A DNA stretch of 64,000 bases from Octopus sinensis. Lineage: Eukaryota. The stretch is taken from NCBI RefSeq assembly GCF_006345805.1, contig NC_043017.1, forward strand, positions 16,182,001 to 16,246,000, in the 5' to 3' direction. The notes below the pieces were generated by a model, which saw nothing but the letters and a program-made list of their open reading frames with translations, was not told the DNA's origin and did not search any database. Position numbers and translations under genes: made by a program. Positions 1 to 62,497 of this stretch are shown in pieces (position 1 is the stretch's first letter; each line of letters opens with the position of its first letter).

Positions 1-112
1 TACTGAAAGATTCACTATAAAATTATTTTAGCATTTTCTATTTTTGACTTGTTTTTTCATATATATCAACTCGTGTGTTCCTTTCCACCCTTATACATAT
101 ATATATATATAT

Positions 113-2300
113 AACGGGAAGCTTTATGAAAATAAACAAAAGACGAAGGCAGGTGGAAAACAAACGAACAATTGTATTAGTATGGCGCTCAGGAAATATA
201 AATAAAACAAGTCTTTAACGTTTCGAGCCTACACTCTTCAACAGAAAGATACACAGAGAGAGAAAAACACAGAAAGAAGGAGAGAAAAAAAATGCGTGCA
301 GTAGCTAACGAATCAAACATGGCGATCTGATTTCGGCCAGAGGTCAAAGATCAAACATGAGACGCGAGAGCGAAATAAGGGATAGAGAAAATAGGTTGAT
401 AAAAGGGTTGAGGGACCAGCTAAAAGTGCGTGGGAGGGGTCTGGATGTGTGTATGTATAGGGTTGGTGTATGTATTAGTATGTATAAGGGTGTGGTGTGT
501 GTGTGTGTGTGTGTGTATGAGAGAGTATTAGTGCGTAAGATTGGTCTGGACGTGCGTATGTATGGGGTTGGTGTATGTATTAGTATGTATTAGTATGTAT
601 TAGTACGTATTGGTATGTATAGGTGTGTGTGTGTGTGTGTGAGTGAGAGAGTATAAGTGCGTATGCGGGGTCTGGACGTGTGTATGTATAGGGTTGGTGT
701 AAGTATTAGTATGTACTAGTATGTATTAGTACGTATTAGTATGTATTAGTTGGTGTGTGTATTAGTATGGCACATCATATGTGATGTGATGTGTAAAGTC
801 ATGTGGTGTAGTGAGGAGAAGGGGGGAGGGGAGAAGAGGGGGGGAGGAGGGGAGGGGAAGAAGAGGGGGAGGAGAAGGGGGAAGAGGAGACGATGGGGGA
901 GAAGGAAGGTGAGGAGGGGGATGAAGGAGGAAAGAGGGGAGGGGGAGAGAGGAGAGAGGGGAGAGAGAGAAGGGAGGAGGAGTGAGGGGGACAGAGGGAA
1001 AGGGGAAGAGGGAGGGAGAAAGAGGGAAGAAGGGAAGGGGAGTAGGGGTGAAAGGATGAAGGACTGAAGAAGTAGGGGTCGGGGGGAGAAAGAGGAGAAA
1101 GGATAGGTGAGGAGGGGGGAGAGGGGGGGTTAGATGAGGAGGGGGGGGAGAGTTGAGACCAAATGGCGTATAAGAGCGAAGAGAGAAGATTAATTCCTGT
1201 TCACGGCGCGCAAACGGGAATCCGGATGGCCTCTGTGTAAGGACAAACCGAACACAGATAGGTGTTGCAAGGAGTGACCGGTGGAGCGGAAATGGCGTGA
1301 GACCGCGTGTGTCGTTCGCAAGGTGGATGTCACGAAGGTGTTCCGCGAACCGGTCAGCCAAGCGGCGTCCCGTTTGTCCGATGTACAAGGAATTGCAGAG
1401 AGAGCAAGAGATGCAATAGATAATATTGCTGGAGGTGCAGGTGAAGGAGTGGATGATGGGATAGGGTCGATGGTGGGTGCTAGTGAGGCGGGTGGTGTGT
1501 TGGAGAGGTAAGGGCAAGTGCGGCAACGTGGGCGGGAGCAGGGGAACGAGCCGGTTGGAGGTAGGGTCAGGGAAGGAGCTATGGACCAAAAGGTCTCGAA
1601 GGTTGTGGGCTCGTTTGAAAGAGGGGAGGGGTCGGTTAGGGAAGAGGTGTGAAGTGGACGGGTCGGACTGGAGATGACGGAAAGCTCGAAGAATGGTGCG
1701 TTGGAGACGTAGGGTCGTGGGGAAAAGGGAGGCGGGAGACTACAGGGCGGGTTCGGGGAGAGAGAGCAGATACACGGTCCACGGACCGTGCTCTGGCAAG
1801 GGCGGTGTGGATAGTGGTGAGGGGGTATCCACGTAGGGTGAAGTGGTGAGCCATACGTTGAGACTGTGTCTCAAAGTCATGGTCGTCACTACAGAGCCTA
1901 CGTAGACGGAGGAATTGGGAATAGGGGATGGAAAGCTTGGTGTGTTCTGGGTGGGAGGAAGAGAGTTGAGGTATGAGTGTGAGTCTGTGTGTTTGTAGTG
2001 AATGGAGGTGGTAAGAGTGGAGTGAAGAATGCTAACCGAATGTCGAGGAGGAAGGAGACAGAGGTGTTGGAGATAGTGGAAGTGAAGTGGAGGGCTGGAT
2101 GGAAAAGATTGGACGAAAGAGAGAGGAAGGAATCTAGATGTTCGCGGGAGAGTGAGGTGGCACCGATAAGTCGTCAATATAACGACCATATAGTTCAGGA
2201 GTGGGACCAGTGAAATAGAGAATATTTGGGCCTCAACATAGCAACGAAACAGGTTGCATAGTTGGGGCCCATTCGCGTTCCCATGGCCACTCCCGAGATC

Positions 2301-28376: not shown

Positions 28377-31300
28377 TCAGCACACATCAGCAAATGATTG
28401 CCCTTCCACCGTCAACAAATTCGCTTCTCCGTTCGTTTTGATCAGACCCTGACCATTTTTACCGTTTCCTTCACATCGATCTCTTCTCAGACCAGGACTG
28501 CTGCTACTGTTGCTACCGTCAGTTGCACTCGAACCTGTTTTTTTCTTTTCCGTCTTCTTCTCAGTTTTCTTCTGACGTTCCAACGCTCGTGCCCTCCTCT
28601 CCGGACTGTCTTCGTTATCGTGTTGGATCGAAAATATTCTCTGTCGCATGTAGACAAACGGACGGCTTTTCTTCGATTTGGCCGTTTTATCGTCCGCTGC
28701 TTGCGCAGAGGAAGCCGGAGACGCGGAGTTCGTCATATTAATGGCACTTGTAGGTCTGTTGGTATTGGCGTTGGTGCTTGACGTCTTTGAAGACGATGTT
28801 GGCGATGGTGACATGGCTTTCTTGCCCACTCTCAGACCGCTTTTTGGTGGCGACTTCGGAGAAGGTGTAGCACTTTTGGAATCATTGATAGACAGAGCTG
28901 AAGAACTGGACGATGTCGATACGGAGGCAGGTGAGGAATCTGGTCGCTGGTGGTGACGTTGTTGCCTTTTGCTGGAATCATTTGAAGTGTCTTTCTTTGG
29001 TTTTCGAGTGAGAAGTCGCTGCATGAAGCCAGTTTTCCGGGTCTGAGGGGAACATTCTCTACTACTGCCGCTTATACATGGACTATCTGGTGTCGCTAAC
29101 GTGTTCCTTTTGCCGGTAGCTGGAGAGGCTGGCTCGACAGAAGTGTCGTCAGCGGTCAGAGATGTACAGGTAGGAGACAAAGTGGAGAAGGTTTGTGCTG
29201 GGCATGAATCTGACATGGAGTTCGAATAACAGTTTGACATGGTAGTCAAGTCAGAAGGGTCTGAACAGCCGGGCGGGGTCCGAGTCTCAGTGATTGCCGG
29301 TAGCGATGGTAGCTGGTTTGTTGGTTTTGCATTAGTTATTGTGTAGTAATCTTTTATAGTGTCTTTCTGGGATTCGTTAAGTTTCCTGGTCGTTGGTATT
29401 TTACTTGTGGACTTTGGCGAGGTTTGTGGGGAGACACTAAGATCTTTAGGGGGGGCGTGTTTGGGAACTGTGACAATTTTTCCGGGTGCCGAGTTGTACC
29501 GCAACAAAGGCAGACGACTTGGAGAAGAATTTAATAAACCAGCTTGTTGTTGTTGCAGTTGTTGTTGTTGTAGTTGCTGTTGTTGTTGTTGTAACTGCAA
29601 ATCATTAGTTGGTGCACTAAACTGACGCGGAAGAGTCTGGCTTTTATCGAGGCCATTGGCAGCGGCGTTGACGTCTTTGTATCTACATTTTAATGTGGTG
29701 ATTGGCTGCGCTTTTCGAGTTGTGGTTCTCTCGCTGATTCGTTGATTATCGCTCAATGGCGAAGCAGACGACAGTGACGTGGACATTGTGTTGTTTGACG
29801 AAGCCATCGTTGTTAATAAAGTCGTTGAACAGCCGACACTGCAACTCATTGTTATCGCCGTTGCTGACGCCGTCGTTGCTGCTGCGGGACAGCTCGAATG
29901 TTTATTGTCGCCATGTCCTGATGACGTCACCGAAGTTGATGTTGAAGAAAACGCTAACAACGGAGACGAAAATAAAGAACTCTTTGGTCTTGTTGTTGTT
30001 GTTGGGGTCGTCAGAGAACAGGGTTCGGAACCTGATGTCGTCGCAGAAACAGTTCCAACCGAGTCAACGCTGCTTGACTCGGTGGTGCTGGTAGACCCCA
30101 GTAAGTCTTTCAACTCGGGCTTGCTTTTTCTGGCCAACGATTTCGGCGACAGTTCCCCAATCTCAGGGGCCTGTTTCGAAGTAGGGCTCTGTAGTTTATC
30201 GCGAACATTTTTCAACTTGTTGATACAAGCCGCTACCTGTTCATTGAGCTGTGATGAGTCAGTGGAAACTCCCTTCTCACTTGTACCACCACTGCATGTC
30301 ATTGTGTCCTTGTCCACACGATCGATCAGTAAGCTGTTCCTGGAAGCGATCGAAGACCTGTTGGAACCGGTTGATTTATCTGATTTATTCAAATAGAAAG
30401 TCATGGTTCCTTTGGAAAAGAGATATCGTGACTGTGTGCTAGTCTCCTTTTCATAGGTTACCTTACGCATGGTATTTACCCCTATACTCACTAGATGTTT
30501 CGAATCATCATCGTTTATCATCTGCAACAACGTCTGTGGGTCCGGTTCCTGACCCAGTGATTGCCCTTCACTCTCAGTGATCATCGGAGTTTGAGTGCCA
30601 GCCTCAACACTCTGACTATTCTCCATAGAAGTCTCGCTGTCCACCATCTCGATCTGTGTGTCCGAATCGTACTCGGAGTTGGCCGTATCTGTATCCGAGT
30701 GCAAATCGAACGCCGAGTCGGGCAAGAGATAGAGGTCGTTGATGTCGACCTCACTCATCAGACCCATGTAGGCGAGCGACTCGGTCGAAGTTGCAACGTC
30801 GTTGCATTCGGCAGCGACCAGGTTCGAGTTTCCCGGAGGGTCGCTGAAAGCTGCTTCGATCGACTTGTCCGCCACGGCGGTCTGAATGGTTTGGACATTG
30901 CGGTCAGTGAACTCTGTTAGTGCCGTGTTGAAGGATAGAACCATAGTCCCTTGATCGTGAGTCAGGGTGGGCGACGACATCGTGGCCCTATGCGCCACTT
31001 CAACGGGTTTCTGGAGACAGCACTTGTTACAAAGGGACGTGTTGTGGTTCTCCATTGATTCCAGCAAAGTCATCGTATTATTCCAGCCTCGAACACACTG
31101 GTGCATCATTCGATCGTCATCGTCTTCTGTAAGTTCGAAGAAAATATCGTCCTCGCTGGCCCCTTGGTCGGAATCAATAACCTCCGATATGTTAGCTATA
31201 TCTCCGCTCGGTTCCCCTTCGGCTAAAAGTAAAAAATCTTCAATGGTGCTGGTCCCTGCATCTGTCTCCGTCATGGTTCCCGTCTCCGATTGCGTGCTGC

Positions 31301-33887
31301 AATCGATCCACGTTTGACTGTCCTCACTGTGGATGTGGATGTTGGTCTGTGCATCAGTAGAGATCACTCTGTCAGTCAACGTCTCACTGTCCTGTGTGAA
31401 TATACTGGTTTCAGTTTGGCAGTCGGCATGCTCCACCGCCTCCGTCGACATTCCTTGACTGACGAGCACCGGATTCAACGTTGAAACTCCGACTTCACAC
31501 ATCGGTATTAAGATGGGTGATGTGGCGGTGTTGATGAATTCTGTGCGGTCCGTCAGTGTCCAGTTATCGACCGTCTTTAACACTGACGTCAGAGTCTGCG
31601 AATCCCTCATCTTTAGCGATTCTGTTTCGGTGCAAACGTCACTAAAACAGCTGGATGACCGTTTCGATGCCGATGTGGCCGACAAGCAACGATTTGTGGA
31701 TCCTTCAATGTCTTCGAATAGAATTCCAGGCAAATCATTTATTGGAGACGTCTCACCGTCAACAAATACTTTCTCTTCTAAGGTGAGTATTTGGTCACCG
31801 GTTCCAGTGTCTTTATAGTTCGGTCTGACACTGACCCCCACCGAAATAGTGGTCGGTTTGACCTCGCTCGAGGCACTGGCCGTTTTCACTGCATCCGTAG
31901 ATGTTCCCTGGGTGGTAATCTGTGACGAGAGTAAAGATGAAGTATCGGTTTCCATATTTCTCGTCTCCTTCTGACCGTTGCGAGAGTGGGTGCTCTCTGG
32001 ACTTCCACGCCCAGATGACCGTGTCGGGGTTGGGGGCGTGCTGGGAGATGGAGGGGAAGATTTGCCACTATCTTGGTAGCGAGGCACGTGAGGTTCAGAA
32101 AACTTCTGCTGCAAAGCAAGGATATCGGCGCTGAGTCTGCGAGATTTTCTGTCGACGACAGGACTGCAAGACCCGGAGTCATGCGAAAGATGCGAACTAA
32201 CCCTACGGTCACAAATCAATACCTTGTCCGTATTGATCGACGCACAGCTTGTGAGAACTGAACCCTCTCCAATACCTTTTTCTTCAGTTCTGGCCGGCTG
32301 TTTGTCTGCTGGACCTCGTGAAGGAGATAAAAGACTTTGTATTTCCAAACCAGATTTTTTGGCTCGTTGCAGCAGCAGCAGATCTTCAGTACTGACGTCA
32401 TCGAGAGACGATATACTCACTTCCGTTTCCATGGATTTTGATTCAGTGGTGACATTCTTCTTCAAAGTCTCGCAGATCGATGTAATATTTGCATCGTCAT
32501 TCAAATACGTCTGACTCCTCCTTGACCGACTCTGTGGTGGGTCAGTCATTGTTCCACGTGACTTTGGATCAATCCAATAGACTTCCGTCGATTTATCTCT
32601 TGTGTGGTTGGTATCGGTGCCAGCCAACCGATTCACCGTTTCTATTTTCGCCGTCTGCGAGGCTGCAGTTCCCCGGTTAACATCGGTCGACATTGTGGTG
32701 GAACTTGTCATCGATGTCACACAATCGGTCTGCATATCGATATGTTTCATCTCAGACCTCATCGACCGATTAAACGCTGAACAATTCGCTTCTTTTTCGC
32801 TGGTGATGTTCATATCTTCTTCTTCTCGGCCCGGAACACTGATGTGGCCCAACTTAACGAAGCCAGGTACAAACTTTATATTAGTTGCCAAATGTTGTGG
32901 AACTTCCGGTAAATCCGGTTGCAGTAAGACATCCAGTTTCTTTTGAAGTTCTTTTTTGAGAAGAAGAATTTCAATTCCTTTATCTTTGACGATGATCTCA
33001 GCCAGGCTGCAAGTGTTCTGTAAATTATCGAAGTTTTCCTGAAGCCAGGATTTATTTTCGAGAAAATCAAGAATCTCATCTCCAAACATGGCGTCTACTT
33101 TCTGCAGAAGTTGTTTCTCTGTTTGGCGCACTTGCGATATATAACTGATGGCTAAGTCTCGTATGCGTTCCCTGGTATCCTTTAAGGCCCCTTCACACTT
33201 ATTGATCATCCCCAATTTCATTCGTAAATCAATCAAGCGGTCTTTACCATGACTAAGTAAGTTTTCGATGGTCGATTTATATTTGGCTGAACCCTCGTTG
33301 AACGAGCATATTTCGTGGTCACGGTGTTCTTGGAATGTGCAAACCACACAAATACATTCATCACAAGGTTCGCAATAGAAGCGCACAATCTCCCCGGAAT
33401 GAGCTTTACATTCAATGTCCTTCTCCCCTTCTAAATCAAACAAACTATGGTTCTGCGTTACTTTCGTTGTCATATGAAGCTTCACGCATGACTTACACAT
33501 CAGTTTGGAACATTCCAAGCACTTCGAACACGCCTCATTGCTTCTGCTACGCACGGTGTGACAAATCTCACAGGGCTGCACTTTTGTAGTCTTCAACCGA
33601 TTGAGAACGTCTGTGAGGTTGGAAACCAGAAAGTTATCCGGTAACCTCCGGATTCCTCCGGTCGGTATCTCCGTCTTCTTACGGCATATTGGACAATAAA
33701 CGTGGCGTGAGTAGAGCGTGTAACGAGAGGTTCTCTCCTGCTCGGAGTCGACATGTTTCTGTAAGCAGTTGCTGCAAAAGGTGTGCAGACACGTCAACGT
33801 TTTGGGGTTCTTGTACGCCTCGAAGCAGATCTTGCACACCAGAAACTGCTCGTTAATCTCCTTCATAAGTTTCAGGTTCGTTGCCAT
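28377..33887 (-). CDS. TRIM/RBCC E3-ligase-like protein with a very long disordered C-terminus (1836 aa, single uninterrupted ORF)
   Basis: C3HC4 RING (CKIC..CLHTFCSNC..CPIC), B-box1 (CEIC..CLEC..CKSC..H..H), B-box2 (CKAH..CEPC..CVVC..H..H), then a coiled coil. 5.5 kb without a stop in AT-rich DNA. No NHL, filamin or SPRY domain recognisable. Confidence 0.95.
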   Translation of the reverse strand: MATNLKLMKEINEQFLVCKICFEAYKNPKTLTCLHTFCSNCLQKHVDSEQERTSRYTLYSRHVYCPICRKKTEIPTGGIRRLPDNFLVSNLTDVLNRLKTTKVQPCEICHTVRSRSNEACSKCLECSKLMCKSCVKLHMTTKVTQNHSLFDLEGEKDIECKAHSGEIVRFYCEPCDECICVVCTFQEHRDHEICSFNEGSAKYKSTIENLLSHGKDRLIDLRMKLGMINKCEGALKDTRERIRDLAISYISQVRQTEKQLLQKVDAMFGDEILDFLENKSWLQENFDNLQNTCSLAEIIVKDKGIEILLLKKELQKKLDVLLQPDLPEVPQHLATNIKFVPGFVKLGHISVPGREEEDMNITSEKEANCSAFNRSMRSEMKHIDMQTDCVTSMTSSTTMSTDVNRGTAASQTAKIETVNRLAGTDTNHTRDKSTEVYWIDPKSRGTMTDPPQSRSRRSQTYLNDDANITSICETLKKNVTTESKSMETEVSISSLDDVSTEDLLLLQRAKKSGLEIQSLLSPSRGPADKQPARTEEKGIGEGSVLTSCASINTDKVLICDRRVSSHLSHDSGSCSPVVDRKSRRLSADILALQQKFSEPHVPRYQDSGKSSPPSPSTPPTPTRSSGRGSPESTHSRNGQKETRNMETDTSSLLSSQITTQGTSTDAVKTASASSEVKPTTISVGVSVRPNYKDTGTGDQILTLEEKVFVDGETSPINDLPGILFEDIEGSTNRCLSATSASKRSSSCFSDVCTETESLKMRDSQTLTSVLKTVDNWTLTDRTEFINTATSPILIPMCEVGVSTLNPVLVSQGMSTEAVEHADCQTETSIFTQDSETLTDRVISTDAQTNIHIHSEDSQTWIDCSTQSETGTMTETDAGTSTIEDFLLLAEGEPSGDIANISEVIDSDQGASEDDIFFELTEDDDDRMMHQCVRGWNNTMTLLESMENHNTSLCNKCCLQKPVEVAHRATMSSPTLTHDQGTMVLSFNTALTEFTDRNVQTIQTAVADKSIEAAFSDPPGNSNLVAAECNDVATSTESLAYMGLMSEVDINDLYLLPDSAFDLHSDTDTANSEYDSDTQIEMVDSETSMENSQSVEAGTQTPMITESEGQSLGQEPDPQTLLQMINDDDSKHLVSIGVNTMRKVTYEKETSTQSRYLFSKGTMTFYLNKSDKSTGSNRSSIASRNSLLIDRVDKDTMTCSGGTSEKGVSTDSSQLNEQVAACINKLKNVRDKLQSPTSKQAPEIGELSPKSLARKSKPELKDLLGSTSTTESSSVDSVGTVSATTSGSEPCSLTTPTTTTRPKSSLFSSPLLAFSSTSTSVTSSGHGDNKHSSCPAAATTASATAITMSCSVGCSTTLLTTMASSNNTMSTSLSSASPLSDNQRISERTTTRKAQPITTLKCRYKDVNAAANGLDKSQTLPRQFSAPTNDLQLQQQQQQLQQQQLQQQQAGLLNSSPSRLPLLRYNSAPGKIVTVPKHAPPKDLSVSPQTSPKSTSKIPTTRKLNESQKDTIKDYYTITNAKPTNQLPSLPAITETRTPPGCSDPSDLTTMSNCYSNSMSDSCPAQTFSTLSPTCTSLTADDTSVEPASPATGKRNTLATPDSPCISGSSRECSPQTRKTGFMQRLLTRKPKKDTSNDSSKRQQRHHQRPDSSPASVSTSSSSSALSINDSKSATPSPKSPPKSGLRVGKKAMSPSPTSSSKTSSTNANTNRPTSAINMTNSASPASSAQAADDKTAKSKKSRPFVYMRQRIFSIQHDNEDSPERRARALERQKKTEKKTEKKKTGSSATDGSNSSSSPGLRRDRCEGNGKNGQGLIKTNGEANLLTVEGQSFADVC

Positions 33888-59793: not shown

Positions 59794-62497
59794 GTGGCGC
59801 GCGGACCTCTATAGGGCCGAGGCTTTCCGCCAACTCAATGACACCTCCTTCTATTCCCTCTGCCCTCTAACCCCACACGTAGCTACAACAGACGGCATCC
59901 TCTACTGTCAAGACCTCATCTCGTCCTCCCGTCTCCCCCGCACCGCATCCAACCTAATTGTGCGAACCCTACGTACCCCCACCATTTACTTCCTCCCCAA
60001 AATCCACAAACCAAACAACCCTGGCCGCCCCATCGTCTCCGCCTGTAACTGCCCCACGGAGCTCATCTCTAAATACCTCGACCGTGTCCTTCCCCCCTAG
60101 TGGCATCTCTTCCCTCCACATCCACGATACCAACCATGCTCTCCGGCTTTCAACTCTTTCTCCTTTCCTCCCGGCTCCTCCAAAATCCTTTTTACTATGG
60201 ACATCCAAAGCCTCTATACTGTTATCCCTCACCACGAAGGACTGCAGGCCTTCGACACTTTCTTGACCTCCGCTCTAACCCTGTACCTGACACCTCCACA
60301 CTCATTCGTCTGGCCGAACTTGTCCTTACTCTGAACTGCTTCTCGTTCGCGGGCGAGTTCTACCATCAGGTCTCGGGAGTGGCCATGGGAACGCGAATGG
60401 GGCCCCAACTATGCGAACCTGTTCGTTGGCTATGTTGAGGCCCAAATATTCTCTAATTTCACTGGTCCCACTCCTGAACTATATGGTCGTTTATATTGAC
60501 GACATTATCGGTGCCACCTCACTCTCCCGCGAACATCTAGATTCCTTCCTCTCTTTCGTCCAATCTTTCCATCCAGCCCTCACTTCACTTCCACTATCTC
60601 CAACACCTCTGTCTCCTTCCTCGACATTTCGGTTAGCATTCTTCACTCCACTCTACCACCTCCATTCACTACAAACACACAGACTCACACTCATACCTCA
60701 ACTTCTTCTCTTCCCCCACCCAGAACACACCAAGCTTTCCATCCCCTATTCCAATTCCTCCGTGTACGTAGGCTCTGTAGTGACGACCATGACTTTGAGA
60801 CTCAGTCTCAACGTATGGCTCACCACTTCACCCTACGTGGATACCCCCTCACCACTATCCACACCGCCCTTGCCAGAGCACGGTCCGTGGACCGTGTATC
60901 TGCTCTCTCTCCCCGAACCCGCCCTGTAGTCTCCCGCCTCCCTTTTCCCCTCACTTACCACCCCACGACCCTACGTCTCCAACGCACCATTCTTCGAGCT
61001 TTCCGTCATCTCCAGTCCGACCCGTCCACTTCACACCTCTTCCCTAACCGACCCCTCCCCTCTTTCAAACGAGCCCACAACCTTCGAGACCTTTTGGTCC
61101 ATAGCTCCTTCCCTGACCCTACCTCCCAACCCGGCTCGTTCCCCTGCTCCCGCCCACGTTGCCCGCACTTGCCCTTACCTCTCCAACACCACCCGCCTCA
61201 CTAGCACCCACCATCGACCCTATCCATCATCCACTCCTCACACTGCACCTCCAGCAATATTATCTATTGCATCTCTTGCTCTCTCTGCAATTCCTTGTAC
61301 ATCGGACAAACGGGACGCCGCTTGGCTGACCGGTTCGCGGAACACCTTCGTGACATCCACCTTGCGAACGACACACCGGTCTCACGCCATTTCCGCTCCA
61401 CCGGTCACTCCTTGCAACACCTATCTGTGTTCGGTTTGTCCTTACACAGAGGCCATCCGGATTCCCGTTTGCGCCGTGAACAGGAATTAATCTTCTCTCT
61501 TCGCTCTTATACGCCATTTGGTCTCAACTCTCCCCCCCTCTCCCCCCACACCTCTAACCACCCTCTCCCCCCTCCTCACCTACTTTCTCCCCCCGACCCC
61601 TACTTCTTCAGTCCTTCATCCTTTCACCCCTAACTCCCCTTCCCTACTTCCCTCTTTCTCCCTCCCTCTTCCCCTTCCCTCTGCTCCCTCACTCCCTCTC
61701 TCCCCTTCTCTTCCCCCTCTCCTCTTTTCCTCCTTCATTCCCCCTCCCCTTCCTTCTCCCTCCTCTCCTCTTCCCCTTTCTCTCCCCCTCTTCTCCCCCC
61801 TCCCCTCTTCTCCTCACTACACCACATGACTTTACACATAACATCACATATGATGTGCCATACTATACACACACCAACTAATACATATAATACGTACTAA
61901 TACATACTAGTACATACTAATACTTACACCAACCCTATACATACACACGTCCAGACCCCGCATACGCACTTATACTCTCTCTCACACACACACACACACC
62001 TATACATACCAATACGTACTAATACATACTAATACATACTAATACATACACCAACCCCATACATACGCACGTCCAGACCAATCCACGCACTAATACTCTC
62101 TCATACACACACACACACACACACACCCTTATACATACTAATACATACACCAACCCTATACATACACACATCCAGACCCCTCCCACGCACTATTAGCTGG
62201 TCCTCAACCCCTTTATCAACCCTATTATCTCCCCTTATTTCGCTCTCGCGTCTCATGTTTGATCTTTGACCTCTGGCCGAATCAGATCGCCATGTTGATT
62301 CGTTAGCTACTGCACGCATTTTTTTCTCTCCTTCTTTCTGTGTTTTTCTCTCTCTGTGTATCTTTCTGTTGAAGAGCGTAGGCTCGAAACGTTAAAGACT
62401 TGTTTTATTTATATTTCCTGAGCGCCATACTAACACAATTGTTCGTTTGTTTTCCACCTGCCTTCGTCTTTTGTTTATTTTCATAAAGCTTCCCGTT
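59794..62497 (+). mobile_element. Penelope-like retroelement, copy 2 (RT + zinc-knuckle linker + GIY-YIG + tail), 5'-truncated and frameshifted
   Basis: YFLPKIHK..PGRPIVS, MDIQSLYT.IP, GVAMGTRMGP, YIDDI, FLDI, YKxTD, CSRPRC, IIYCISCSLCNSLYIGQT, REQELIF..GLN. Flanked by (TA)n. Confidence 0.95.
62361..62398 (+). ncRNA. Minimal hammerhead-ribozyme-like motif in PLE tail
   Basis: UCUUU-CUGUUGA-A-GAGC-GUAG-GCUC-GAA-ACGU-U-AAAGA. Confidence 0.7.

What the first reader, a model, noticed from the sequence alone, without database searches (positions are those of the whole stretch)
30255..32745. TRIM protein with a giant multivalent LC8-type motif array
Seen: after the RBCC head, the disordered middle carries about 25 regularly spaced hexapeptides ending in (Q/E/S/M/N)T, e.g. 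HIDMQT, MRDSQT, HADCQT, STDAQT, SEDSQT, DRNVQT, EAGTQT, KETSTQ, HDQGTM, EKGVST. Known: such TQT-like anchors bind the dimer hub LC8/DYNLL in ASCIZ, Nup159, Chica and KANK. Inference: this is an E3 ligase that uses LC8 to zip a long tail into a ladder-like scaffold or to sense LC8 levels. I do not recognise this architecture from characterised TRIMs, where NHL, filamin or SPRY domains usually follow.
Basis: partly seen in the sequence, partly recalled or inferred. Interest (0 to 1): 0.72.

Follow-up and report, generated by a model that had tools for sequence, protein, structure and literature searches.

The report
TRIM ligase with LC8-motif array
An octopus gene encodes a ubiquitin-ligase head followed by a long floppy tail with about two dozen conserved, tightly spaced docking sites of the type bound by the dimer hub LC8, so the tail may be zipped into a long beaded rod; no ligase is known to be built this way.

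Summary
One intronless ORF (window 28377-33887, minus strand, 1836 aa) encodes RING, two B-boxes and a coiled coil, then a tail with no detectable domain. Between aa 386 and 1208 (window 30249-32750) I count 23-27 short motifs, against 1-3 in shuffled sequence.

- **Motif grammar:** the motif is [D/S]-[K/R]-x-[T/V/I]-[Q/N/M/S/G]-T-[D/E/P], which is the published LC8/DYNLL consensus. Only one site is a strict TQT.
- **Spacing:** sites sit 12, 24 or 36 residues apart. Twelve equals an 8-residue motif plus a 4-residue linker, as in the LC8 rods of KANK1 and Nup159.
- **Conservation:** orthologues in molluscs, an annelid and a brachiopod carry 22-42 such sites each. Motif positions are far better conserved than the flanks (identity 0.45 versus 0.17).
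- **Structure:** AlphaFold2 predicts both the array and the C-terminal tail as disordered. This argues against a beta-solenoid or a hidden NHL, filamin or SPRY domain.
- **Range and literature:** a profile search of 1.84 billion proteins found only this family, and I found no paper describing it.

Best reading: a TRIM ligase whose paired tails are laddered by LC8 dimers. LC8 binding itself is untested. I rate it a new variant of a known kind, interest about 0.7.

The parts
28377..33887 (-). Single-exon CDS of 1836 aa, the whole TRIM-like protein
   Evidence: ORF. It is 94% identical over 100% of its length to an annotated 1836-aa Octopus bimaculoides protein.
33684..33836 (-). RING finger (aa 18-68)
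   Evidence: Pfam zf-C3HC4, E 1.2e-9. Closest solved structures are TRIM3 and TRIM2 (E 2.5e-30 and 1e-26) and the TRIM56 RING.
33438..33572 (-). B-box-1-like zinc finger (aa 106-150)
   Evidence: The Midline-1 B1B2 structure 2jun aligns to aa 106-198. The Cys/His pattern is visible in the translation. There is no Pfam hit of its own.
33303..33419 (-). B-box-2 (aa 157-195)
   Evidence: Pfam zf-B_box, E 3.8e-8.
32868..33290 (-). Coiled-coil region (aa ~200-340)
   Evidence: The TRIM28 RBCC structures 6h3a and 6qaj align over aa 12-313, and TRIM25 over 15-319. The boundaries are approximate.
30249..32750 (-). Array of 23-27 LC8-type 12-residue units (aa 380-1213)
   Evidence: Site list. Enrichment. 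Conservation. Predicted disordered.
32496..32567 (-). Close-packed pair PKSRGTMTDPPQ / SRSRRSQTYLND (position 0 at aa 447 and 459)
   Evidence: 12-residue gap. Conserved in 13 and 11 of 21 orthologues.
31539..31646 (-). Run of three units at 12-residue pitch (position 0 at aa 754, 766, 778)
   Evidence: The family consensus here is STET...DKET.T...D.WT.T.
31362..31502 (-). Run of four units (position 0 at aa 802, 814, 826, 837), ending in the near-invariant DNETLTE-type site QDSETLTD
   Evidence: The site at 837 is present in 21 of 21 orthologues. E, T, L and T are invariant in alignment A2.
30576..30647 (-). Pair MVDSETSMENSQ / SVEAGTQTPMIT; the second is the only strict TQT site (LC8 matrix score 14.0)
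30387..30494 (-). Run of three units, LVSIGVNTMRKV / TYEKETSTQSRY / LFSKGTMTFYLN; the best-conserved stretch of the array
   Evidence: 21 of 21 orthologues for each unit. Family consensus GVNT.PKLTFEKET.TP.RHLFSKGTMTFY.
30249..30320 (-). Last pair RVDKDTMTCSGG / TSEKGVSTDSSQ (position 0 at aa 1196 and 1208)
30189..30257 (-). Conserved amphipathic helix directly after the array (aa 1211-1233, CINKLKNVRDKL)
   Evidence: It is the only confident AlphaFold2 element, with pLDDT 81-92 and again. C, I, L, V and L are invariant. The motif occurs in 61 of 66 family members.
28380..30188 (-). Disordered C-terminal tail carrying conserved short motifs (RKAQPITTLK, RYNSAP, SKIP, GFMQRLL, PFVYMRQRIFSIQHDNED)
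   Evidence: AlphaFold2 mean pLDDT 47 with no fold. No Pfam hit. Motif conservation.

Best explanation
The gene encodes a cytosolic TRIM-type (RING, B-box 1, B-box 2, coiled-coil) ubiquitin ligase. In place of the usual C-terminal folded domain it has an intrinsically disordered stretch of about 830 residues, built from 12-residue units.

Each unit carries an 8-residue beta-strand docking motif of the LC8/DYNLL type, [D/S]-[K/R]-x-[T/V/I]-[Q/N/M/S/G]-T-[D/E/P], followed by a linker of about 4 residues.

Inferred mechanism: the coiled coil pairs two chains. LC8 dimers, each with two identical grooves, then bind the same motif on both tails in register. Where units sit at the minimal 12-residue pitch, in runs of 2-4 in octopus and up to 7 in other species, neighbouring LC8 dimers would stack into stiff beaded rod segments joined by hinges. 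Most sites are non-TQT and would be individually weak, so assembly should be cooperative and sensitive to LC8 availability, as in KANK1.

The ladder would hold the ligase head tens of nanometres from the duplexed C-terminal tail. At about 3.5 nm per LC8, 23 sites would give up to about 80 nm. The conserved tail motifs (SxIP-like, 14-3-3-like) would then be presented as pairs.

Shown here: the domain content, the motif grammar, enrichment, periodicity, conservation, predicted disorder and family range. Inferred: LC8 binding, rod formation, and everything downstream.
For: - **Architecture:** RING and B-box are found by Pfam. The RBCC head matches the TRIM3, TRIM2, TRIM28 and TRIM56 structures.
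- **Flanks:** at 515 T-x-T sites from 14 species, D at -4 is 4.5-fold enriched, K at -3 is 2.9-fold enriched, G/E/A at -2 and D/E/P at +2 are about 2-fold enriched. This matches the published LC8 rules (PMC6607443; PMC3078936).
- **Literature-only matrix:** a matrix built from the 79 published binders gives 15 hits in octopus and 13-27 in orthologues. Shuffles give 1-2.6 and reversed sequences give 2-8.
- **Blind test at position 0:** 62% Q/N/M/S/G against 27% background, with K/R/D/P excluded. This matches the anchor residues listed in PMC12057147.
- **Spacing:** a gap of 12 occurs 46 times against 5.7 expected, 24 occurs 21 times and 36 occurs 16 times, while gaps below 11 are almost absent. 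Thr and Asp autocorrelation peaks at 12, 24, 36 and 48, including in octopus alone. Twelve equals an 8-residue motif plus 4 residues, the 3-5 residue linkers of the KANK1 and Nup159 rods (PMC12803091).
- **Conservation:** identity inside motifs is 0.45 against 0.17 outside, p 1.7e-23. The +1 Thr column is 0.87 conserved. Anchor Thr residues are 83% identical against 31% for other Thr. The result is the same when sites are chosen only by the literature matrix.
- **Independent arrays:** the same grammar appears in annelid and brachiopod arrays that do not align to the mollusc ones.
- **Disorder:** AlphaFold2 with a 49-sequence alignment gives mean pLDDT 40, with 819 of 900 residues below 50.
- **Not a recent repeat:** there is no DNA-level tandem repeat in the array.
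- **Not secreted:** there is no signal peptide or transmembrane segment.
Against: - No binding experiment or complex model could be run here.
- Only about 12% of family sites have Gln at position 0, and octopus has a single TQT. Anchors such as TET, TCT, TWT and TAT are unvalidated for LC8.
- My matrix threshold (5.7) lies below the median score of published TQT-containing non-binders (6.7). Individual site calls are therefore unreliable, and only the ensemble statistics carry weight.
- One conserved island, DAQT, resembles a published non-binder (IRS1 VDTAAQTN).
- TRIM coiled coils are generally antiparallel (my own knowledge). The two tails must therefore first be brought together before they can zip in parallel.
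- The family matrix is partly circular for the species it was trained on. Octopus, the other cephalopods and seven of the nine distant members scored were not in the training set (the annelid and the brachiopod were).
Confidence: 0.65

Rival explanations
1. The 12-residue T-x-T units bind a different partner by beta-strand addition, for example the structurally related Tctex/DYNLT light chain. Alternatively they pair with each other, zipping the two tails directly into a cross-beta ladder or driving condensates without LC8.
For: Alternating strand-like pattern, with conserved positions -5, -3, -1 and +1 and hydrophobic V/I/L at +4. Many anchors (TST, TET, TLT, TCT, TWT) are not validated LC8 anchors. 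The AlphaFold2 model shows two isolated 3-residue strands.
Against: The flank grammar and the position-0 spectrum match LC8 specifically. The units are rich in charged and polar residues (D, K, E, T), which makes an unassisted cross-beta core unlikely. AlphaFold2 gives no confident intramolecular sheet. No defined DYNLT consensus matches the motif (my own knowledge).
Confidence: 0.15
2. The motifs are mainly regulatory phosphorylation clusters. T(-1)-x-T-[D/E] fits the acidophilic kinase pattern S/T-x-x-D/E (CK2-like) and the phospho-Thr-x-x-D pattern read by FHA domains. The array would then be a phospho-switch or a phospho-dependent docking platform.
For: D/E is enriched at +2, which is +3 from the -1 Thr. 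The Thr residues are highly conserved. The kinase and FHA patterns are from my own knowledge.
Against: This does not explain the conserved D at -4 and K/R at -3, the exclusion of K/R/D/P at position 0, the acceptance of V/I at -1 (26% of sites), or the strict 12-residue quantisation with no gaps below 11. It is compatible with LC8 binding as an added regulatory layer rather than an alternative.
Confidence: 0.1
3. The region folds on its own into a T-x-T beta-solenoid, like the 12-residue-repeat insect antifreeze proteins, or into another unrecognised domain.
For: 12-residue periodicity with T-x-T. This recalls the Tenebrio antifreeze repeat (my own knowledge).
Against: AlphaFold2 with 49 sequences gives mean pLDDT 40 and no sheet. 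There is no PDB sequence match at E up to 1. Periodic runs are only 2-7 units long, interrupted by variable linkers and lineage-specific inserts. There is no Cys ladder.
Confidence: 0.04
4. The region is a mucin-like or adhesin-like Ser/Thr-rich low-complexity sequence, as the database names suggest ('serine-rich adhesin for platelets', 'mucin-17-like'). On this reading the motifs are compositional noise.
For: Names given by NCBI to the orthologues. The array is 12.5% Thr and 14.4% Ser.
Against: There is no signal peptide or transmembrane segment, and the head is a cytosolic RBCC. Shuffled and reversed controls, and the equally Thr-rich C-tail, lack the motifs. Conservation is position-specific. 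There is no DNA tandem repeat.
Confidence: 0.03

Closest known systems
KANK1 L2 linker - LC8 rod (Walker et al., bioRxiv 2025/2026, PMC12803091)
   Same: A long disordered region next to a coiled coil. It has 15 or more mostly non-canonical, individually weak LC8 sites (anchors TST, TNT, VNT and others) separated by 3-4 residue linkers, and LC8 converts it into hinged rods. The family here uses the same anchors (TST, TNT, VNT, TMT), has a 12-residue pitch, and has runs separated by longer hinges.
   Different: No sequence homology was found: the profile search returned only this family. The head here is an RBCC E3 ligase rather than a cortical adaptor with ankyrin repeats. There are more predicted sites (23 in octopus, up to 42 elsewhere). 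Binding is experimentally shown for KANK1 and untested here.
ASCIZ/ATMIN (LC8 transcription factor and concentration sensor)
   Same: A multivalent LC8 client with 7-11 motifs in a disordered domain, including a TMT anchor in Drosophila (PMC10046861).
   Different: ASCIZ motifs are mostly strong TQT sites with heterogeneous linkers of 3-41 residues. Q positions are 20-36 residues apart in Table S4. This gives partly occupied, heterogeneous complexes suited to sensing. Here the anchors are mostly weak and the pitch is quantised at 12 residues, which points to cooperative rods. ASCIZ has a zinc-finger DNA-binding head, not an E3.
Nup159 DID - Dyn2 'pearl string'
   Same: Tandem LC8-type motifs with short 4-5 residue linkers that form a stacked rod with a structural role (PMC12803091; PMC10046861).
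   Different: Nup159 has only five, strong, easily predicted motifs, sits in a nucleoporin, and is fungal.
TRIM2/TRIM3 (class VII) and TRIM56
   Same: These are the closest RBCC sequences among solved structures (E 2.5e-30, 1e-26 and 3.4e-13). The order RING, B-box, coiled coil is the same.
   Different: TRIM2 and TRIM3 continue with filamin and NHL repeats, and TRIM56 with an NHL-like domain (my own knowledge). Here no folded domain follows.

Membership tests
TRIM / RBCC E3 ligases | N-terminal RING finger | tested here: met
   Pfam PF00097, E 1.2e-9, aa 18-68. TRIM2, TRIM3 and TRIM56 RING structures match.
TRIM / RBCC E3 ligases | One or two B-box zinc fingers after the RING | tested here: met
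   Pfam PF00643, E 3.8e-8, aa 157-195. The MID1 B1B2 structure aligns to aa 106-198.
TRIM / RBCC E3 ligases | Coiled coil following the B-box, mediating dimerisation | tested here: inconclusive
   Sequence alignment to the TRIM28 and TRIM25 RBCC structures runs through aa ~313-319. I ran no coiled-coil predictor or structure model of this part, and dimerisation cannot be tested here.
TRIM / RBCC E3 ligases | E3 ubiquitin-ligase activity | not testable with these tools
   Needs an in vitro ubiquitination assay.
TRIM class VII (TRIM2/3/32/71-like) | C-terminal filamin and/or NHL repeats | tested here: not met
   No Pfam hit after aa ~200 at E up to 0.1. AlphaFold2 finds no fold in aa 361-1260 or aa 1216-1836.
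Multivalent LC8/DYNLL clients (ASCIZ, Nup159, KANK1 type) | 8-residue motifs matching the LC8 consensus ([D/S]-4, K-3, x-2, [T/V/I]-1, Q0, [T/V]+1, [D/E]+2) | tested here: met
   Flank enrichments. Literature-matrix hits of 15 against 2.2 in shuffles. Blind position-0 test. Only one strict TQT; most anchors are variants.
Multivalent LC8/DYNLL clients (ASCIZ, Nup159, KANK1 type) | Motifs lie in intrinsically disordered sequence | tested here: met
   AlphaFold2 mean pLDDT 40, with 819 of 900 residues below 50. No Pfam or PDB match.
Multivalent LC8/DYNLL clients (ASCIZ, Nup159, KANK1 type) | Several motifs in tandem, with linkers that allow adjacent LC8 dimers | tested here: met
   23-27 sites in octopus and 22-42 in orthologues. 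The modal gap is 12 residues, and gaps below 11 are absent.
Multivalent LC8/DYNLL clients (ASCIZ, Nup159, KANK1 type) | Motifs evolutionarily conserved relative to flanks | tested here: met
   Identity 0.45 versus 0.17, p 1.7e-23. The same grammar appears in non-alignable annelid and brachiopod arrays.
Multivalent LC8/DYNLL clients (ASCIZ, Nup159, KANK1 type) | Direct binding of LC8 dimers, two client chains per dimer | not testable with these tools
T-x-T beta-solenoid (insect antifreeze-type) repeats | Long uninterrupted regular repeats that fold into a confident beta-helix | tested here: not met
   AlphaFold2 gives no sheet and pLDDT about 40. Runs are only 2-7 units long.
Mucins / serine-rich adhesins (names given by databases) | Signal peptide and tandem Pro/Thr/Ser repeats | tested here: not met
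   The N-terminus is the RING region and the maximum 19-residue hydropathy is 1.51. There is no tandem repeat at DNA level.

The most novel reading that the evidence does not exclude
This spiralian TRIM family builds the longest LC8-templated assemblies yet proposed, with 20-40 LC8 dimers per pair of tails (roughly 80-150 nm of hinged rod). It would act as a 'ruler' ubiquitin ligase. LC8 availability would switch the tail from a floppy coil to a rod, setting the distance between the catalytic RBCC head and a duplexed C-terminal module. That module may dock on microtubule plus ends (the conserved SxIP-like motif) and on 14-3-3 (the conserved RxxSxP motif).
Probability: 0.25. Interest if true: 0.85.

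Novelty: new variant of a known kind. Interest (0 to 1): 0.7.

Why it matters
Multivalent LC8 clients are few: ASCIZ, Nup159, KANK1, Chica, RSP3 and Bassoon. Only recently was it shown that many weak, non-canonical sites at short pitch can cooperatively turn a disordered chain into a rod.

This family would be an independent natural example, conserved at least since the common ancestor of molluscs, annelids and brachiopods. It has two to three times more sites than any known client and a visibly quantised 12-residue pitch.

- It supplies hundreds of evolutionarily filtered non-TQT motifs (TST, TNT, TMT, TGT, VNT and others) that could be used to retrain LC8 predictors.
- It allows a natural test of how linker length encodes rigidity.
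- It links the LC8 hub directly to a ubiquitin ligase, an architecture not described for TRIMs.
- It shows that database names such as 'serine-rich adhesin' and 'mucin-like' for these proteins are compositional misnomers.

Tried and rejected
- **Strict TQT or QT counting:** only 1 TQT and 16 QT (about 10 expected), so it is not informative on its own. I replaced it with flank analysis and matrices.
- **First shuffle script:** it timed out and was rerun.
- **Folded-domain hypotheses:** Pfam, a PDB sequence search of the array, and AlphaFold2 of the array and the C-tail all found nothing.
- **Recent satellite-like expansion:** Tandem Repeats Finder found no DNA repeat in the array.
- **Secreted mucin or adhesin:** there is no signal peptide or transmembrane segment.
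- **Homologous arrays on other protein types or in other phyla:** a profile of aa 740 to the end, searched against 1.84 billion representatives, gave 51 hits, all this family or fragments of it. Cluster look-up named only one further taxon, the cuttlefish Acanthosepion pharaonis.
- **Literature:** searches for a TRIM or E3 with LC8 or TQT motifs found nothing relevant.
- **Exact LC8Pred scoring:** it could not be reproduced because the published weights and thresholds were not in the text held. I used a plain log-odds matrix built from Table S4 instead.
Full report
**What is there**

It is 94% identical over its full length to an annotated 1836-aa Octopus bimaculoides protein. The window is therefore from an Octopus species and the coding sequence is intronless.

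Pfam finds a RING finger (aa 18-68) and a B-box (aa 157-195), and nothing after about aa 200, even at E up to 0.1. The first 360 residues match solved TRIM heads. TRIM3 scores 2.5e-30 and TRIM2 scores 1e-26. The whole TRIM28 RBCC aligns over aa 12-313, the TRIM56 RING matches, and the MID1 B1B2 pair aligns over aa 106-198. The head is therefore RING, B-box 1, B-box 2 and coiled coil. The finding's interval 30255-32745 corresponds to aa 381-1211.

**Checking the observation**

All ten quoted peptides are present. Simple counts are unimpressive, with one TQT and 16 QT in the whole protein. The signal lies elsewhere.

- **T-x-T enrichment.** T-x-T is about two-fold enriched in the tails of octopus and nearly all of the 65 orthologues (z 2.6-6.7; one exception at z 0.6). 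TT and T-x-x-T are neutral or depleted.
- **Flanks.** I aligned 515 T-x-T sites from 14 diverse species on the anchor. D is 31% at -4 (4.5-fold), K is 21% at -3 (2.9-fold), G/E/A/S dominate at -2, D/E/P at +2, and V/I/L at +4. This is the published LC8/DYNLL consensus, [D/S]-4 K-3 x-2 [T/V/I]-1 Q0 [T/V]+1 [D/E]+2 (PMC3078936), and fits the positional rules of Jespersen et al. 2019 (PMC6607443).
- **Literature-only matrix.** I built a log-odds matrix from the 79 validated binders in their Table S4, with the threshold at the 10th percentile of leave-one-out scores. It gives 15 hits in the octopus tail, against 2.2 in shuffles (maximum 6) and 6 in the reversed sequence. Orthologues give 13-27 hits, against 1-2.6 and 2-8.
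- **Family matrix.** A 12-mer matrix trained only on non-cephalopod family members finds 24 sites in octopus aa 361-1260, against 1.3 in shuffles and 2 reversed.
- **Internal control.** The C-tail (aa 1216-1836) has the same Thr fraction but only 1 and 0 hits.
- **Register.** The observation itself stands.

**Periodicity**

Gaps between consecutive hits are quantised. A gap of 12 residues occurs 46 times against 5.7 expected. A gap of 24 occurs 21 times and 36 occurs 16 times. Gaps shorter than 11 are almost absent, with 5 seen against about 65 expected.

Thr and Asp autocorrelations peak at 12, 24, 36, 48 and 60, and this holds in octopus alone (2.3-fold at 12). In octopus, 8 of 26 gaps are exactly 12.

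The building block is therefore a 12-residue unit, made of an 8-residue motif plus about 4 linker residues. This is the geometry reported for LC8 rods. KANK1 has 3-4 residue linkers, 15 or more weak non-canonical sites, and 53 nm for 15 dimers. Nup159 has 4-5 residue linkers (PMC12803091). Drosophila ASCIZ QT2-3 has a 3-residue linker (PMC10046861).

There is no tandem repeat at the DNA level in the array. The period is therefore maintained at the protein level and is not a recent expansion.

**Family and conservation**

Orthologues of 1500-2250 aa occur in cephalopods, gastropods, bivalves and a chiton, in the annelid Paralvinella, and in the brachiopod Lingula. A further cluster is the cuttlefish Acanthosepion. 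Each has 22-42 sites against 1-3 expected, with close-packed runs of up to 7.

In a 22-sequence alignment, the conserved islands of the tail are the motifs themselves.

- Column conservation is 0.87 at the +1 Thr, 0.73 at -1, 0.66 at 0 and 0.64 at -4. Linker positions are at about 0.45.
- Identity to octopus is 0.45 inside motifs and 0.17 outside (Mann-Whitney p 1.7e-23).
- Anchor Thr residues are 83% identical, against 31% for other Thr.
- The result holds when sites are chosen only with the literature matrix (0.45 versus 0.20).

The annelid and brachiopod arrays do not align to the mollusc ones (about 16% identity), yet they obey the same grammar. This is the behaviour expected of a functional short-motif array with site turnover.

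A blind test gave further support. When sites are selected without using position 0, that position is S, N, Q, M or G in 62% of 544 sites, against 27% in the background, and K/R/D/P are nearly excluded. The Barbar laboratory lists exactly Q, N, M, S and G as residues seen at the LC8 anchor (PMC12057147). The commonest anchors are TST, TMT, TNT, TQT, TET, TLT, TGT, TCT and VNT. Of these, TMT (MYO5A, dASCIZ), TNT (KIBRA/WWC), TLT (MAG) and TST/TNT/VNT (KANK1) have precedents.

**Rival structures**

AlphaFold2 on aa 361-1260 with a 49-sequence alignment gives mean pLDDT 40, with 819 of 900 residues below 50 and no sheet. The only confident element is a helix at aa 1211-1233, immediately after the last motif.

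The C-tail aa 1216-1836 gives mean pLDDT 47 and only short helices. The array has no PDB sequence match at E up to 1.

This argues against a beta-solenoid and against a hidden NHL, filamin or SPRY domain. There is no signal peptide or transmembrane segment, so the database names ('serine-rich adhesin', 'mucin-17-like') are compositional artefacts.

**Range and literature**

A profile of aa 740 to the end, searched against 1.84 billion representative proteins, returned 51 hits, all family members or fragments. Full-text searches found no TRIM or E3 with an LC8 or TQT array.

**Mechanism (inferred)**

The coiled coil pairs two chains. LC8 dimers bridge identical motifs on the two tails in register. 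Runs at 12-residue pitch become stiff stacks, and longer linkers and lineage-specific inserts act as hinges. Because most sites are weak variants, assembly should be cooperative and dependent on LC8 level.

At about 3.5 nm per LC8 dimer (from 53 nm per 15 dimers), 23 occupied sites would add up to about 80 nm. The pattern of short uniform linkers favours a structural rod, as in KANK1 and Nup159, over an ASCIZ-type sensor, whose linkers are heterogeneous.

Duplexing would also present the conserved C-terminal motifs as pairs.

**Weaknesses**

- Individual site calls are unreliable, because the threshold lies below the median score of published non-binders.
- Several conserved anchors are unvalidated.
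- TRIM coiled coils are typically antiparallel (my own knowledge), so the tails must first converge.

**Verdict**

The LC8-array interpretation is supported as far as sequence analysis can take it. This is a new variant of a known kind: a multivalent LC8 client on a TRIM ligase chassis, with the largest array yet predicted. My confidence that LC8 binding is the function is about 0.65.

Noticed in passing
window 29394-29405 (aa 1495-1498, SKIP within PKSTSKIPTTRK): A conserved S-x-I-P-type motif in a basic, Ser/Pro-rich context, present in 35 of 66 family members. From my own knowledge this resembles the EB1-binding motif used for microtubule plus-end tracking. Not tested.
   Followed up: partly
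window 29463-29519 (aa 1457-1475, SRLPLLRYNSAPGKIVTVP): A strongly conserved block. Its RYNSAP core fits the 14-3-3 mode-1 pattern R-x-x-S-x-P (my own knowledge) and is present in 31 of 66 members. R, S, P and I are invariant in the alignments.
   Followed up: partly
window 30189-30257 (aa 1211-1233): An amphipathic helix, CINKLKNVRDKL, directly after the last motif. It is the only confident AlphaFold2 element (pLDDT 81-92) and occurs in 61 of 66 members. Function unknown; it may be a partner-binding or pairing helix that caps the array.
   Followed up: partly
window 30702-30794 (aa 1032-1062): The block ATSTESLAYMGLMSEVDINDLYLLPDSAFDL (family consensus ATSTESLPYIGLLSE.D.DEL...PE.AF) is the best-conserved non-periodic island inside the array. 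AlphaFold2 does not predict it as folded. Function unknown.
   Followed up: no
window 31113-31235 (aa 885-925): An acidic insert found only in cephalopods (octopuses and cuttlefish), containing DDIFFELTEDDDD. From my own knowledge this resembles an FFAT (VAP-binding) motif. Alignment conservation here is zero outside cephalopods.
   Followed up: partly
window 32244-32273 (aa 539-548): Octopus has degraded the most canonical, strongly conserved site of the family. IRSR(K/R)VQT(D/E)IS in other molluscs and in cuttlefish has become IGEGSVLTSC.
   Followed up: partly
window 28608-28661, 29010-29027, 29688-29717: Further conserved C-tail motifs of unknown function: PFVYMRQRIFSIQHDNED (46 of 66 members), GFMQRLL followed by a Lys run (44 of 66), and RKAQPITTLK (49 of 66).
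   Followed up: no
window 29544-29592 (aa ~1431-1448): A poly-Gln tract (TTG repeat on the plus strand). It is longer here than in O. bimaculoides and is predicted helical at low confidence.
   Followed up: no
window 762-1589 (-) and window 1-2000 / 60001-62000: A 275-aa ORF has a weak GIY-YIG nuclease hit below the Pfam cut-off (E 1e-3), possibly a remnant of a mobile element. Both window ends have extreme GC skew (+0.58 and -0.56). Many AT/TA, CT and GT microsatellites lie elsewhere in the window.
   Followed up: no
orthologues P0001, P0006, P0014, P0016, P0029 and others: Public names for family members ('serine-rich adhesin for platelets', 'mucin-17-like', 'mucin-4-like', 'mucin-5AC') are driven by composition and are misleading for a cytosolic RBCC protein.
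   Followed up: yes
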